DNA of 64,000 nt from positions 124,001 to 188,000 of IMG/VR virus record IMGVR_UViG_3300028654_000001. One strand, written 5' to 3'. The position numbers were made by a program, and so were the translations under genes. The notes beneath the pieces were generated by a model that did not search any database, was not told the DNA's origin, and saw nothing but the letters and a program-made list of their open reading frames with translations. Of this stretch, positions 24,957 to 30,424 are shown in pieces (position 1 is the first letter of the stretch; every line of letters begins with the position of its first letter).

Positions 24957-25229
24957 CTAGCCGTCAGAGCCTCCTGAGGCGATGATGAGGAAGTAGGGAG
25001 TTCCTTCTTTCATCCCACAGAATTGCTCCAGTGCCCCATCGACTAACCTACGCTTGACACTCACGATGGGTCTGAAGTCAGTATCTGGATGATTCTCGAC
25101 AAGGACTTCAAGGTTCCCATGTCTACCTCGTATCTTGGTGAGATGGGAGATCAGATCATCAATTTTGTCGAGCTTCACTTTCCTGCTCCTGCGGCCTGGA
25201 GGAGGACCAAAACTTCCATATGGTTCCAT
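24957..25229 (-). CDS. hypothetical protein
   Basis: ORF track. Confidence 0.65.
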   Translation of the reverse strand: MEPYGSFGPPPGRRSRKVKLDKIDDLISHLTKIRGRHGNLEVLVENHPDTDFRPIVSVKRRLVDGALEQFCGMKEGTPYFLIIASGGSDG

Positions 25230-25717
25230 CTGCTCCCTGGGTCGAGTATCGAAACATAATCATGTTCCGTGACACTGATCACCGGGGGTCTCTTGTTGAG
25301 CATGTACTTGACGAGTTCGGTACATCCATTCTCACAAGCTTGGATCATGGCTAGAGGGTAGTCAGCATCGGATCGATGTTCTAGGTCCTGGAACATCTGG
25401 TACTGACCGTCTCGAGCAGCCATCTCGAGTGGAGAAAGAGGAGTACCTTTCCCTCCACCAAATACTGGAACAAAACCTCCCATGCGAGAGACCAAGAGAA
25501 TCTCTTCAGGGGTCCTGATAGCAGGGGCATCCTTGAGACGGGTGACGAGGATCGGGAACCCACGGCTGATAGCCCAGGCTAAGAAGATCCCTTCAGCGTT
25601 CGGGTGCTTCAAAGCCCCCTGAACAGCTTTCTTCGTACCCTTTTTCTCCTTTTCCACGTAGGAGGCGACGATCTCTTGCCAGGTAAGGTCCCTCCAGTCC
25701 TTAGGGCCAGGGGTCAT
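25175..25717 (-). CDS. protein with ankyrin-like C-terminal repeats
   Basis: TPLSPLEMAARDG...AMIQACENGCTELVKYML...HMEVLVLL. Confidence 0.6.
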   Translation of the reverse strand: MTPGPKDWRDLTWQEIVASYVEKEKKGTKKAVQGALKHPNAEGIFLAWAISRGFPILVTRLKDAPAIRTPEEILLVSRMGGFVPVFGGGKGTPLSPLEMAARDGQYQMFQDLEHRSDADYPLAMIQACENGCTELVKYMLNKRPPVISVTEHDYVSILDPGSRWNHMEVLVLLQAAGAGK

Positions 25718-26577: not shown

Positions 26578-27045
26578 TCAGGGATCTCTCGCTCCAAAGC
26601 TCTCTCTATCGTGCACTAGAGTTGGTATTGATTCTGAAGTCTTGGTAAGCCAACATGCATTGAGGTATCCAAAACCCGTGATACGAAACCAAAGGTTGAG
26701 AGGTTCGTGTTTGGAAACCGTTCTCCTATAGAGGATTAGTCTAGCTATCGGCTCGTTTCCAACTTCTGATAGGTACAGGTGGAGGGCTTCAACCTCGTGC
26801 GACTCATTAGGTGCATAGTTGAGCTGGAAGACTTGGATCTCTTGTTCCCTTTCAGTCTCCTCAATGATAACTCTCATCGGGGCAGGGATCGGGATCATGA
26901 TGCGAGTCCCAACAGTCTTCCTCCTGGATATGAACCCTACCCAAGCGAAACCCCTTCCCTCTTGTTCGACCTTGGCGATCTCCTCTGCTGAGCGCCGGTT
27001 GGGTCTTATTAGCCCCCAATCAGATTCAATGCTGTCGTCGACCAT
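26578..27045 (-). CDS. hypothetical with N-terminal IESYW-type tag
   Basis: MVDDSIESDWGLIRP; body partly resembles the N-terminal half of 25714-26562. Confidence 0.85.
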   Translation of the reverse strand: MVDDSIESDWGLIRPNRRSAEEIAKVEQEGRGFAWVGFISRRKTVGTRIMIPIPAPMRVIIEETEREQEIQVFQLNYAPNESHEVEALHLYLSEVGNEPIARLILYRRTVSKHEPLNLWFRITGFGYLNACWLTKTSESIPTLVHDRESFGARDP

Positions 27046-27298
27046 GGATGTAGTCTTTCGGATCCCCTACGAAACCAGGTCCATCTATTGCCTGGAACTT
27101 CCCGTGCTCATCATTTACCCCAATGAATAGCTGACCGTGTGGGAGGTGGGTTGAAGAGAAAGCCTCGAGAGCCGGATTTGGCTCATCTAGATCCCTATCA
27201 ATCTCAAAGGACAACTGACACTTGTAACATCTGAGAATAGGCGTCTTACCAGGCTCAACTTGGATAAAAGTAACTGAATCTGCATCTTTTTTCGTCAA
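27026..27298 (-). CDS. small zinc-finger hypothetical
   Basis: CYKC...HLPH. Confidence 0.65.
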   Translation of the reverse strand: MTKKDADSVTFIQVEPGKTPILRCYKCQLSFEIDRDLDEPNPALEAFSSTHLPHGQLFIGVNDEHGKFQAIDGPGFVGDPKDYIHGRRQH

Positions 27299-27443
27299 AT
27301 TATAAAACCTCTCAGATATTCAGTGGTTTTTACCATGTAACTTGGACTTTATACCACTTCTCAATTAGTTTGGAAGACATTTTGATGTACCTTGAGTGAC
27401 AACCTGGGTTTGTTAGCTGTTATTTGGCTGGAATTACTTGAGT

Positions 27444-27659
27444 ATGGCCTCCAAAGAGGAACTCCTGAGAAGGATGAAAGTCAACCGTTGCGGCTCCTGC
27501 ACCCACTACCTAGGGCACCTTGACTCCGAACAACACTGCTATCTCGAGAAGGACACTTGGCAGTACATCACAACATGGCAATCGGATGCCCCTCGATGCC
27601 CCAAGTGGGAACACGTCGGGGGAGTCCTAACTCGCTTAGAGAAAGTTAGCAGACGATAA
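27444..27659 (+). CDS. small Cys-rich hypothetical
   Basis: CGSCTHY...C...CPKW. Confidence 0.7.
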   Translation: MASKEELLRRMKVNRCGSCTHYLGHLDSEQHCYLEKDTWQYITTWQSDAPRCPKWEHVGGVLTRLEKVSRR

Positions 27660-27676
27660 TCTAGGTTTTCCTTGAC
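27658..27676 (+). promoter_or_regulatory. duplicated 19-bp upstream element containing -35 TTGAC
   Basis: AATCTAGGTTTTCCTTGAC, identical to 28993-29011. Confidence 0.7.
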
Positions 27677-27748
27677 CGATCATTAGGACTCTGATTAGAT
27701 ACTCATGAATTGCTGGAGTTCTAATGAATACAAAATGAAGGACATTTA

Positions 27749-28153
27749 ATGACGAGTAAAAACGCAACTACTCTCACGGTAAACATGACTAGGGAGCCTG
27801 GTGAGAGGGGGTACGTCAAGGAATTGATTGAAAAGACGTGGGATTGGTCTATCAGCGATACAATTGCCTTTGCAAAGTCTCAGGGGAAGACCTTGAAAAG
27901 AGGACATGTCTACAATATCCGAACCCTAGTGAAGCATAAAGGTAAACCCACTAAACCAGCCCGCCTGGTTAGCTCAAAACCTCTCCTCACAGAAGATGGT
28001 TCCAGGTTGATTCCTGGGTACTCAACCGAACTCTACATCAAACCAACTGCCAACCCTGAGCAGGCAATGATCAATATCGTAGTTGAACTCGGTGCGTTGG
28101 GGGCCATGCAACTACTATACAAGACCCTTAGCAAAACCCGAAGACTGGGTTAA
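27749..28153 (+). CDS. putative DNA-binding protein, paralog 1 of 4
   Basis: MTREPGERGYVKELIEKT...IAFAKSQG...VYNIR...ELGALGA. Confidence 0.8.
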   Translation: MTSKNATTLTVNMTREPGERGYVKELIEKTWDWSISDTIAFAKSQGKTLKRGHVYNIRTLVKHKGKPTKPARLVSSKPLLTEDGSRLIPGYSTELYIKPTANPEQAMINIVVELGALGAMQLLYKTLSKTRRLG

Positions 28154-28168
28154 GAGATTGAGAACTCT

Positions 28169-28975
28169 ATGAGTAAGATGACAGGAAAACCTCTGGTTAA
28201 CTTGCATGAAGCTGGATTCAAGAGCCAACTAGCAGCGGACTACTTCCACGAAAGCATCCCCAAAACTGTACGGCTATATAGAAGTCGGGGAATCAAGGAT
28301 GCTGATAAGAAAATGGTGGTTAGGGGTAAGTATCTTATCCGAAAGTACCTAGAGATCATCCAGAATAAGGCCCGTCGCGGCGTCGGGGTGAGCCCGTGGC
28401 AGTTCAGTTACGATACTTTGGATCTGTCTGAAGAAGAAGCTCTGACCAGATCTTCTAGGTTGGGGGTAAGTATTAGCAACCCCTCATTAGTACATCACCG
28501 GAAGTTCATCATTAGGATGAGTAACCTCCCAGCAAGTATGCTGAGATCTCTCCGGAATAAACCAGAGAAAATCCGGAATGGTAAGCCCAAGCCTCAGACC
28601 TCTGTGAATACCTCTTCTCAGATCCAACCCTGCAATCTCGAAAGTTACCCCATCCTCACATCGGAGGACAAGAAGCGGTTCGCTCGTGAAACCCTTGGTA
28701 TGAATAAAGAAGAGGCCTTTCAACTAGCCCTGGCTCGAGGGTGGAACACTACCAGAAGGTACTTCTCCAAGCGGCGATTAATAGCCAGTAAAGAAGAAAT
28801 AGGGTTACGGTTTGTACCTGCAAGGCACACTTCACCAGTGGCTGTTGCGCCAAACTCACAGAATCCGTTGAGTATTCTCAGAGACTTGTACCGGAACTAC
28901 GGAGTTCCTCAACTCAAGGCTTGGGTTGATGACCTGATCCACGAGGCGGATAACGAACTAAACATCTTGTCATGA
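28169..28975 (+). CDS. putative DNA-binding protein, divergent multi-repeat paralog 2
   Basis: KKRFARETLGMNKEEAFQLALARG...; C-terminal LRDLYRNYGVPQLKAWVD. Confidence 0.75.
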   Translation: MSKMTGKPLVNLHEAGFKSQLAADYFHESIPKTVRLYRSRGIKDADKKMVVRGKYLIRKYLEIIQNKARRGVGVSPWQFSYDTLDLSEEEALTRSSRLGVSISNPSLVHHRKFIIRMSNLPASMLRSLRNKPEKIRNGKPKPQTSVNTSSQIQPCNLESYPILTSEDKKRFARETLGMNKEEAFQLALARGWNTTRRYFSKRRLIASKEEIGLRFVPARHTSPVAVAPNSQNPLSILRDLYRNYGVPQLKAWVDDLIHEADNELNILS

Positions 28976-28992
28976 ACGGATCAATGGTCAAC

Positions 28993-29011
28993 AATCTAGG
29001 TTTTCCTTGAC
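28993..29011 (+). promoter_or_regulatory. duplicated 19-bp upstream element
   Basis: AATCTAGGTTTTCCTTGAC. Confidence 0.7.
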
Positions 29012-29087
29012 TTCTAATGAACCGTCTGATTGAATCCTTGGTGATCCCCGTTGGTTACGGGTACTAACCGATTGAAAAGGAAGTCAA

Positions 29088-29513
29088 ATGGCAAAGAAGA
29101 TTCAAGTTCAGATGACCAACAAGCCCACGGAATCGGGCTATCGAAAGGAGTTGATCCGGAAGACCACTGCTTACCCTATTGAGGACGTCATCGCCTATGC
29201 CAAGGAGCTCGGCATCGAGTTGACGAAGAAGTACGTCTATACGACCCGTTGGTCACTCAAACACCCAAAGAAGTCGAAGAGAGCTTCGACGAAACGAGCT
29301 TTGAAGAAGGCTCCCGTTGTAGCCATCATAAAGGCAGAATCTACATCGGAATTCAAGAAGTCAGGTCGACAAGCGATACCCCCTCAAGGTGGGACTAACC
29401 ACCTGGTCTCTGAAAGGGCTATGGCCAAACTCATCCTCCAGTTGGGCACCCTCAGAGCTCGAGAGTTGATCGATCGAACAGAAGAGACCTTTCATAAAAA
29501 CCTAGGGATCTGA
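29088..29513 (+). CDS. putative DNA-binding protein, paralog 3
   Basis: MTNKPTESGYRKELIRKT...IAYAKELGIELTKKYVYTTR...LQLGTLRARELID. Confidence 0.85.
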   Translation: MAKKIQVQMTNKPTESGYRKELIRKTTAYPIEDVIAYAKELGIELTKKYVYTTRWSLKHPKKSKRASTKRALKKAPVVAIIKAESTSEFKKSGRQAIPPQGGTNHLVSERAMAKLILQLGTLRARELIDRTEETFHKNLGI

Positions 29514-29518
29514 GTCTC

Positions 29519-29923
29519 ATGCCCAAGAGAAAAGTTCAGATCGACATCCAAATGACTCGAAGACCCGGGGAATCTGGGTACAAGACCGAATTCATTCGGA
29601 AAACCTATCACTTGCCTGTGAAGGATATCCTAATCTTCGCCAGAGCGAGACATATAAAAGTCACCCCGGCAGAGATCTATACTACTCGATCCAACGATAG
29701 GAAAAAGGCTGCAGAGGGAAGGAGTCCTCAGCTCTTACCACCTTCAGCTCTGAAGTTACTCCCTGCAAAGGGTGCTCCGAAGACGGTTGTGAGGTTTGAC
29801 GCTTTTGAGAGCCCTCAACCTGAACGTGACTTCTTAAAACTTGTGCTTAGACTTGGAATCGTTCGATCCAAGGAAATAACTGACAACGCTCGAGAGCTCA
29901 TTCGAAAAGAGTTTGGGATCTGA
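29519..29923 (+). CDS. putative DNA-binding protein, paralog 4
   Basis: MTRRPGESGYKTEFIRKT...IYTTR...LRLGIVRSKEI. Confidence 0.85.
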   Translation: MPKRKVQIDIQMTRRPGESGYKTEFIRKTYHLPVKDILIFARARHIKVTPAEIYTTRSNDRKKAAEGRSPQLLPPSALKLLPAKGAPKTVVRFDAFESPQPERDFLKLVLRLGIVRSKEITDNARELIRKEFGI

Positions 29924-30172
29924 TACCCACTTGAGGCCCAAGCTCTAGGTTTGAGCCTTCTGAGCTTCCCGATTCCCGGCGGCGACCCCTTTATGACAGC
30001 GGGTCCCGTCGGGCTTGTTGTGGTCATAAATGGGTTTGGGGCTCGTGTGGACTGATGGCTCCCACTATCCCATCTTCCTACAGTTACAGTAAGGGCACGC
30101 CCACCGGCTACGTGAGGGCGGCCTGAGATCGATGTGGTAGGTCGAATCAATAAGTTGGAAGCTCATCATGAT

Positions 30173-30424
30173 TCAGAATTTTCTCACGGTTCTCGGAAGA
30201 GACTTTTTGTACTCCTCAACGCGTGACTGTCCCTTTGAGGTCACCGAAAGCAGCCCTTCTTGGCAATCAATGCAACCAGTCAAGGCCAAGCCAAGAAGAG
30301 CGCTGTCAAGCTCCTCACCAGTGTAGTTGTCGAAGGCCCTATCAATGTCTGACCGCACGGTGTTCTCACCCATTGCAATGAAGTACAGCACCTCATTGTT
30401 GATCTCTGCTTGTCGTTCGCTCAT
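30173..30424 (-). CDS. small winged-helix-like hypothetical
   Basis: ELDSALLGLALTGCI...LSVTSKG. Confidence 0.65.
   Translation of the reverse strand: MSERQAEINNEVLYFIAMGENTVRSDIDRAFDNYTGEELDSALLGLALTGCIDCQEGLLSVTSKGQSRVEEYKKSLPRTVRKF

What the first reader, a model, noticed from the sequence alone, without database searches (positions are those of the whole stretch)
27658..29923. Cluster of four paralogous nucleoid-like DNA-binding proteins in two duplicated transcription units
Seen: four + strand ORFs share an HTH-like block (most clearly MTxxPxExGYxxE(L/F)IxKT...AxAxxxG...YxxR in three; 28169 is divergent), a K/R/P/A linker and a C-terminal LxLGxxxAxE helix pair. Each gene pair is preceded by an identical 19-mer ending in TTGAC, followed by a shared CTGATT. 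From memory the architecture matches an uncharacterised multi-copy family in Polyangiaceae/Planctomycetes. Inference: phage histone- or H-NS-like silencers, anti-silencers or genome-protecting proteins.
Basis: partly seen in the sequence, partly recalled or inferred. Interest (0 to 1): 0.6.

Follow-up and report, generated by a model that had tools for sequence, protein, structure and literature searches.

The report
Basic HTH-like protein cluster in megaphage
A 512-kb soil megaphage carries four related, very basic small proteins of an unnamed family shared with other soil phages and Polyangiales bacteria; they are driven by two copies of a promoter found nowhere else in the genome and most likely bind DNA, though this is untested.

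Summary
Four + strand genes lie at the stated coordinates: A 27749-28153, B 28169-28975, C 29088-29513 and D 29519-29923. A, C and D are clear paralogs. B is a divergent member, best read as three N-domains plus one C-domain.

Both units are preceded by an exact 19-mer. It has only these two copies in the whole 512,571-bp virus genome. It belongs to a roughly 45-bp promoter-like module conserved in four related phages.

The proteins match no Pfam, NCBIfam, PHROG or PADLOC model. They do belong to a real unnamed family of 417 representative clusters. Its architecture is one to five N-domains, basic linkers and a single C-terminal helical domain. Members occur on phage-like contigs and, in several copies, in Polyangiales genomes.

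The AlphaFold model shows a confident three-helix N-domain with only weak similarity to transposase and repressor HTH domains. A disordered +10 linker and a C-terminal helix follow. pI is 10.0-10.5, and orthologs evolve under purifying selection.

Best reading: DNA-binding architectural or regulatory proteins with a dedicated, possibly autoregulated, promoter. DNA binding and oligomerisation are inferred, not shown. No homology to H-NS, histones or HU was found.

The parts
27438..27659 (+). Small Cys-rich ORF ('zf', 73 aa, four Cys). It lies directly upstream and its stop codon overlaps the first 19-mer. It is an associated gene, not a family member.
   Evidence: The L007 ortholog is 66% identical with dN/dS 0.22. 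A relic of its 3' end precedes the promoter in L016 and in the second window copy. Pfam gives only a weak sub-threshold hit.
27658..27700 (+). Promoter-like module, copy 1: 19-mer 27658-27676 (T-tract plus TTGAC at 27672-27676), 13-nt spacer, conserved 11-mer 27690-27700 (TG plus a -10-like hexamer).
27749..28153 (+). Gene A (134 aa, pI 10.0): N-domain, linker, C-domain. A-type orthogroup.
28169..28975 (+). Gene B (268 aa, pI 10.2). Divergent member read as three N-domain repeats (aa 11-49, 73-111, 163-205) plus a C-domain (aa 229-265).
   Evidence: hhalign with two-sequence profiles. One search shows orthology to L007 7047-7861. One search gives a collinear but weak match. Searches show it is not detected directly.
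28993..29035 (+). Promoter-like module, copy 2: 19-mer 28993-29011 (TTGAC at 29007-29011), 13-nt spacer, conserved 11-mer 29025-29035.
29088..29513 (+). Gene C (141 aa, pI 10.2). N-domain helices at aa 18-25, 31-40 and 47-58, basic disordered linker aa 59-104 (net +10), C-terminal helix aa 105-139.
29519..29923 (+). Gene D (134 aa, pI 10.5). Starts 6 nt after C. D-type orthogroup.
   Evidence: It is 82% identical to the L007 D ortholog with dN/dS 0.18.

Best explanation
A, B, C and D are phage versions of an unnamed family of small, strongly basic, modular nucleic-acid-binding proteins.

Proposed mechanism (inferred, not shown):
- Each N-domain is a three-helix HTH-like unit. Its third helix carries the conserved Y-x-Y-x-x-R stretch and a near-invariant Arg, and would contact DNA.
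- The K/R-rich disordered linker adds non-specific backbone contacts.
- The single C-terminal helical domain, which holds the family's one invariant Gly, would mediate self-association or association between paralogs. Complexes would then carry several DNA-binding units. B supplies three such units in one chain.
- On this view they act as architectural, nucleoid-associated-like proteins on phage and/or host DNA.

Regulation: the genes are expressed from two copies of a dedicated promoter with a sigma-70-like -35, a TG and a -10-like hexamer. This promoter occurs nowhere else in the 512-kb genome. Its extra conserved upstream bases may serve as an operator for feedback control by the same proteins.

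Shown here: paralogy, family membership, architecture, basic charge, purifying selection, and the uniqueness and conservation of the promoter module.

Inferred: DNA binding, oligomerisation, promoter activity and autoregulation.
For: - Family and architecture: the profile search gave 417 clusters, many with 2-5 N-domain stretches and one C-domain. There were no fusions to other domains in the proteins inspected.
- Structure: AlphaFold pLDDT is 93-96 over the three-helix N-domain and about 90 over the C-helix, with a disordered linker.
- Fold matches: the best matches for the N-domain are DNA-binding HTH domains. These include SETMAR/mariner, Tc3 and ISCth4 transposases, ArgR, sigma-N, TrpR and StbA, at Z 4.1-5.2 and rmsd 1.3-3.1 A over 39-52 residues. 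Atlas shape neighbours carry transposase HTH Pfam families. The helix 2-turn-helix 3 stretch has the classic Ala-5/Gly-9 HTH spacing with a slightly longer turn (read from A5).
- Charge: pI is 10.0-10.5, net charge +11 to +20, and the C linker is +10.
- Real genes: dN/dS is 0.16-0.18 against orthologs. Three orthogroups (A, C, D) are retained in related phages, with a 98/98-supported phage clade.
- Promoter: paralog synonymous sites are saturated (pS 0.81-0.88), yet the 19-mer is identical. The module is conserved in six upstream regions of four phages and is unique in the genome.
Against: - No significant sequence or structure match to any characterised DNA-binding family. Foldseek E is at least 1, and VIA Z of at most 5.4 is within the tool's stated noise range for small helical models.
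- The PDB profile search found nothing. Rho_N hits are below Pfam's cutoff.
- The homodimer test of the C-domain gave no verdict.
- There are no expression data. All 16 runs that hold the DNA are DNA-type soil or rhizosphere metagenomes.
- The -10-like hexamer has T rather than A at position 2, so the promoter call is by pattern only and the consensus scan did not list it.
- The phage already encodes a canonical HU homolog.
Confidence: 0.5

Rival explanations
1. They are sequence-specific transcription factors of the phage's temporal programme rather than general architectural proteins. They would bind defined operators, including the 19-mer at their own promoters, through the HTH-like helix 3.
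For: The HTH-like N-domain. The 19-mer module is unique to their own two promoters and conserved across phages. The phage has three sigma-70-like ORFs, which suggests layered transcription control.
Against: No other copy of the motif exists in 512 kb, so there would be no regulon beyond themselves. Tandem arrays of up to five N-domains with low-complexity basic linkers, and up to 7 matches per bacterial genome, fit multivalent low-specificity binding better.
Confidence: 0.2
2. They bind RNA or the transcription/translation machinery (Rho-N/SAP-like or GcrA-like adaptors). The C-terminal domain would dock on RNA polymerase, sigma factor or the ribosome, and the basic linker would bind RNA.
For: Weak Rho_N matches over helix 2 and the turn: 14.6 bits in C and 21.5 bits in P0018, against a cutoff of 24.9. 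There is a weak ribosomal-protein match, and a weak GcrA match in the viral fold search. A single conserved C-domain per protein would suit a partner-docking module.
Against: All these matches are below threshold. No OB or other RNA-binding domain follows the N-domain. No partner was identified.
Confidence: 0.12
3. They are DNA-condensing internal proteins packaged in the virion with the 512-kb genome, neutralising charge in the capsid.
For: Small size, very high pI and several paralogs in a very large phage.
Against: The cluster lies among small unknown genes rather than next to recognisable structural genes. It has its own sigma-70-like promoters. The same family is multi-copy in bacterial chromosomes.
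Confidence: 0.08

Closest known systems
Unnamed family of hypothetical proteins in Polyangiales MAGs and soil phage contigs (e.g. MBK8258248.1, Polyangiaceae bacterium)
   Same: The same N-domain, basic linker and C-domain. Profile E-values reach 1e-28 for non-identical members. Tandem gene copies and multi-repeat proteins also occur there.
   Different: The phage clade is a separate, well-supported branch (98/98). It has its own N-terminal extension (M-T-x-K-P-x-E-x-G-Y) and less Ala/Pro-rich linkers. No member has a tested function.
Bacterial histone H1-like / basic-tail DNA binders (Chlamydia Hc2, Pseudomonas AlgP, Myxococcus CarD C-terminal region, Streptomyces DdbA)
   Same: They share a lysine-rich low-complexity region used for non-specific DNA binding. 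This rests on established knowledge and the abstracts listed. NCBIfam H1-like models give weak hits on the linkers of bacterial members.
   Different: There is no homology outside the low-complexity region (E 0.004-0.9, far below cutoffs). Here the basic region is a linker between two folded modules, not a tail.
H-NS / MvaT / Lsr2-type silencers and their phage-encoded homologs
   Same: Small proteins with two modules joined by a flexible linker, one module for DNA and one presumably for self-association. Paralogs that could form mixed oligomers.
   Different: No sequence match. The module order is reversed. The putative DNA-binding module is a three-helix HTH-like domain and can be repeated. 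Oligomerisation is not shown.
Phage histone-like proteins (SPO1 TF1 of the HU family; phi29 p6)
   Same: Phage-encoded small proteins that coat or bend phage DNA and influence transcription. This is the functional analogy proposed, and it rests on established knowledge.
   Different: There is no HU fold in A-D. The phage's HU homolog is a different gene (G000 399164-399442). No relation to p6 was detected.
Tri-helical HTH domains of Tc1/mariner and IS transposases, and the ArgR N-terminal domain
   Same: They are the best structural superpositions of the N-domain, at rmsd 1.3-2.7 A over 39-49 residues.
   Different: Z is only 4-5, sequence identity 2-17%, and there is no transposase or effector domain. 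The similarity may reflect only a common three-helix arrangement.

Membership tests
Unnamed Polyangiales/soil-phage family (N-domain, basic linker, C-domain) | Significant profile match over both the N-domain and the C-domain | tested here: met
   A, C and D match at E 2e-38 to 4e-33 against the A5 HMM and match each sub-domain HMM separately. The library search gave 417 hits. For B this holds only through two-sequence profiles: N-domains at E 2e-7 to 9e-5 and the C-domain at 2.6e-3.
H-NS family | Histone_HNS C-terminal DNA-binding domain (PF00816) with an N-terminal coiled-coil oligomerisation domain | tested here: not met
   No Pfam hit at E<=1. The predicted helical domain is C-terminal and the HTH-like domain is N-terminal.
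Linker histone H1 / bacterial H1-like (Hc2, Burkholderia-type) | Winged-helix globular domain (PF00538), or a match to the NCBIfam H1-like models | tested here: not met
   No Pfam hit. NCBIfam H1-like models hit only bacterial members' linkers, at 9.7-17.5 bits against cutoffs of 80-135.
HU/IHF (Bac_DNA_binding, PF00216) | Match to PF00216 | tested here: not met
   No hit in A-D. The one PF00216 match in the genome is a different gene.
Helix-turn-helix superfamily (tri-helical) | Three-helix bundle with helix 2-turn-helix 3 geometry that superposes on solved DNA-bound HTH domains | tested here: inconclusive
   The model is confident (pLDDT 93-96). Matches are only Z 4.1-5.2, with Foldseek E>=1.
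Rho_N / SAP-type helix-extended-helix | Match to PF07498 above the gathering score | tested here: not met
   14.6 bits in C and 21.5 bits in P0018, against a cutoff of 24.9. Only half of the model is matched.
Small terminase | N-terminal HTH plus an oligomerisation core, next to a large terminase gene, one per phage | tested here: not met
   The top VIA row (4xvn) has rmsd 9.3 A. There are five paralogs per genome and several copies in bacteria. There is no PHROG terminase hit.
Nucleoid-associated proteins (functional class) | Demonstrated DNA binding and abundance on the chromosome | not testable with these tools
   Only composition (pI 10.0-10.5) and fold hints are available. No RNA or protein data exist.

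The most novel reading that the evidence does not exclude
This would be a previously undescribed family of modular chromatin-like proteins, built from one to five HTH-like units, basic linkers and one association domain. It has radiated in soil phages, including a 512-kb megaphage that keeps four or five specialised paralogs, and has spread into Polyangiales genomes. The phage paralogs would form mixed assemblies that organise or shield the giant genome and feed back on their own unique promoter.
Probability: 0.3. Interest if true: 0.6.

Novelty: new variant of a known kind. Interest (0 to 1): 0.42.

Why it matters
Very large phages must compact, organise and time the expression of half a megabase of DNA, and few of their DNA-organising proteins are known. 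If this family binds DNA, it adds a new protein type to phage and bacterial chromatin. It is modular, with variable repeat number, and is shared between soil phages and myxobacteria. It also comes with a compact, testable regulatory element: a 45-bp promoter/operator unique in the genome. If it does not bind DNA, it is still a widespread unnamed family with 417 representative clusters that merits a name and a structure.

Tried and rejected
- Family libraries: Pfam, PHROGs, NCBIfam and PADLOC scans of A-D and of family members gave nothing above threshold.
- RNA families: the Rfam scan of 27000-30400 gave nothing.
- Phage DNA: blastn against GenBank phages found no match.
- Solved structures by sequence: the PDB profile search gave only chance-level hits.
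- Structure searches: Foldseek against PDB and BFVD gave no E<=0.001.
- C-domain homodimer (complex prediction, residues 96-141 x2): no verdict, score 0.12 against a mark of 0.42. This is not evidence for or against binding.
- AlphaFold of B as a single sequence: mean pLDDT 40.8, unusable.
- Word-index homolog search with B: only itself.
A3 in viral contigs and P0035 in genome contigs gave no confirmed relatives.
- General promoter class: rejected. The composite motif and its cores occur only at the two sites, and the other TTGAC-N13-TCTG sites share nothing further.
- Domain fusions: the long open frames around bacterial matches (742 and 355 aa) are artefacts of high-GC frames or long linkers and contain no extra domains.
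- Literature: two searches found no description of this family.
- Operators' notes: read laying was not used, because all holders are DNA contigs and cannot show expression. No alternative genetic code was invoked.

Full report
**Context.** The window is bases 124001-188000 of a 512,571-bp IMG/VR virus record with direct terminal repeats, so this is a megaphage. Near-identical DNA occurs only in rhizosphere and soil metagenome runs, and none of them is RNA. GC content is about 49%. The region is a + strand island in a long run of small - strand genes without known families.

**Observation.**
- A: 27749-28153, 134 aa
- B: 28169-28975, 268 aa
- C: 29088-29513, 141 aa
- D: 29519-29923, 134 aa

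A, C and D are full-length paralogs. BLASTP gives C-D 1e-21 and A-C 2e-17.

B is not significant by BLASTP and is missed by the family HMMs. B is, however, orthologous to L007 7047-7861 in a related 65-kb contig. Two-sequence profiles of B segments with that ortholog match the family N-domain three times. The values are 93%, 60% and 94% probability, with E 3e-7, 9e-5 and 2e-7. They also match the C-domain once, weakly (E 2.6e-3). Cross-controls score much worse. B is therefore best read as N-N-N-C, an architecture common in the wider family.

**The 19-mer.** It is exact at 27658-27676 and 28993-29011. No third copy exists within 3 mismatches in the whole genome.

**The promoter-like module.**
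- Upstream regions from four phages were aligned: window x2, L004, L007 x2 and L016.
- They share a T-tract plus TTGAC, an invariant 13-nt spacing, and a conserved 11-mer of the form TCTG-R-Y-T-R-R-A-T. This reads as a -35, a TG and a -10-like hexamer 17 nt after the -35.
- The composite pattern occurs only at these two sites in the genome.
- The paralogs are saturated at synonymous sites (pS 0.81-0.88). An identical 19-mer therefore needs constraint or gene conversion.
- The module is also conserved upstream of a gene only 40% identical to C (L016). This points to function.
- The simple sigma-70 scan did not list it, because position 2 of the hexamer is T. The promoter call is an inference.

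**Are they real genes?** Yes. dN/dS against orthologs is 0.16-0.18, and the small upstream Cys-rich ORF gives 0.22. A maximum-likelihood tree puts all phage versions on one side of a 98/98-supported split. It resolves three orthogroups (A, C and D types), each with members in other phages. Relatives show different stages: C alone (L004), C-D (L016), and zf-A-B plus C-D (L007 and this window).

**Family.**
- No Pfam, PHROG, NCBIfam or PADLOC model matches.
- A profile search of 1.84 billion representatives found 417 clusters at E<=1e-3. Many are 180-490 aa long with 2-5 N-domain stretches, K/A/P-rich linkers and one C-terminal domain.
- Named members are hypothetical proteins of Polyangiaceae or Polyangiales MAGs.
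- One such 11.5-Mb genome has three copies, two of them adjacent.
- 14 of 41 sampled genomes of that family carry matches (up to 7 each), against 3 of 81 sampled across the phylum.
- Several other members lie on phage-like contigs that carry DNA polymerase A, an endolysin-type peptidase, a Dam methylase or a resolvase.
- ESM Atlas neighbours are unnamed clusters labelled Uroviricota, Myxococcota and Planctomycetota.
- The phage has a fifth N-domain gene outside the window.

**Structure.**
- AlphaFold on a 36-sequence alignment gives mean pLDDT 80.7. There is a confident three-helix N-domain (aa 18-58, pLDDT 93-96), a disordered linker (aa 59-104) and a C-terminal helix (aa 105-139, about 90).
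- Foldseek finds nothing significant.
- The exhaustive aligner's best N-domain matches are DNA-binding HTH domains at Z 4.1-5.2. These include SETMAR/mariner, Tc3 and ISCth4 transposases, ArgR, sigma-N, TrpR and StbA. The C-helix matches generic coiled coils. The tool states that such Z values can arise from common helical arrangements.
- The near-invariant Ala and the Gly four residues later fit the classic HTH pattern with a slightly longer turn. The only invariant column is the Gly in the C-domain.
- All four proteins have pI 10.0-10.5, and the C linker carries +10.

**Interpretation.** The best-supported reading (confidence 0.5) is a family of modular, basic, HTH-like nucleic-acid-binding proteins acting as architectural or regulatory factors. 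A dedicated promoter, possibly under feedback control, drives the phage copies.

| Status | Items |
|---|---|
| Shown | paralogy, family membership, architecture, charge, selection, promoter-module uniqueness and conservation |
| Inferred | DNA binding, C-domain association, promoter activity, autoregulation |

The homodimer test gave no verdict. Rivals are:
- sequence-specific regulators (0.2)
- RNA- or RNA-polymerase-associated adaptors (0.12), based on sub-threshold Rho_N hits
- packaged DNA-condensing proteins (0.08)

**Comparison with known systems.** The proteins work most like bacterial H1-like or basic-tail DNA binders and phage histone-like proteins. They are not members of the H-NS, H1, HU or Rho_N families, and each membership test failed. 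The phage encodes a separate HU homolog and three sigma-70-like ORFs.

**Verdict.** This is an uncharacterised family of a broadly known kind, of moderate interest until DNA binding is tested.

Noticed in passing
G000:C1:24919-25410 (- strand), outside the window: A fifth protein with the family N-domain (HMM E 2e-12). It has a K/A/V/P-rich repeat linker and an unrelated C-terminus. Its N-domain is closer to the bacterial consensus than those of A-D, and it lacks the 19-mer promoter.
   Followed up: partly
window 27307-27359: A roughly 50-nt non-coding block in the divergent intergenic region is almost identical in L004 and L007 and recognisable in L016. On the - strand it contains an extended -10-like TGGTATAAA just upstream of the leftward 90-aa gene. 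It is unique in the genome and is probably the promoter or leader of the leftward operon.
   Followed up: partly
window 27438-27659: A conserved 73-aa ORF with four Cys lies directly upstream of the first promoter copy. Relics of its 3' end precede the promoter in L016 and in the second window copy, so the ancestral duplicated unit included its tail.
   Followed up: partly
L007:8283-8285 and L007:7047-7861: In the related 65-kb contig the C ortholog has an in-frame TGA where the window has CGA. The B ortholog is spread over three frames. This means either decay of the cluster in that phage or assembly errors. No recoding was assumed.
   Followed up: partly
window 29046-29064: A small hairpin in the leader of C-type genes is kept in four phages. 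It has 7 pairs, 2 of them with compensatory changes. Support is weak.
   Followed up: partly
G000:C1:399164-399442; 255886-256089; 77304-77516; 485246-485353: The megaphage encodes a canonical HU/IHF-family protein and three ORFs with sigma-70 region 2.
   Followed up: no
window 25175-25717 (- strand): A 180-aa ORF has sub-threshold ankyrin-repeat matches (best E 2.5e-4, just under Pfam cutoffs).
   Followed up: no
L008:5001-6233 (Polyangiaceae MAG GCA_016712345.1): Two family genes sit in tandem in a bacterial chromosome, mirroring the tandem arrangement in the phage.
   Followed up: partly
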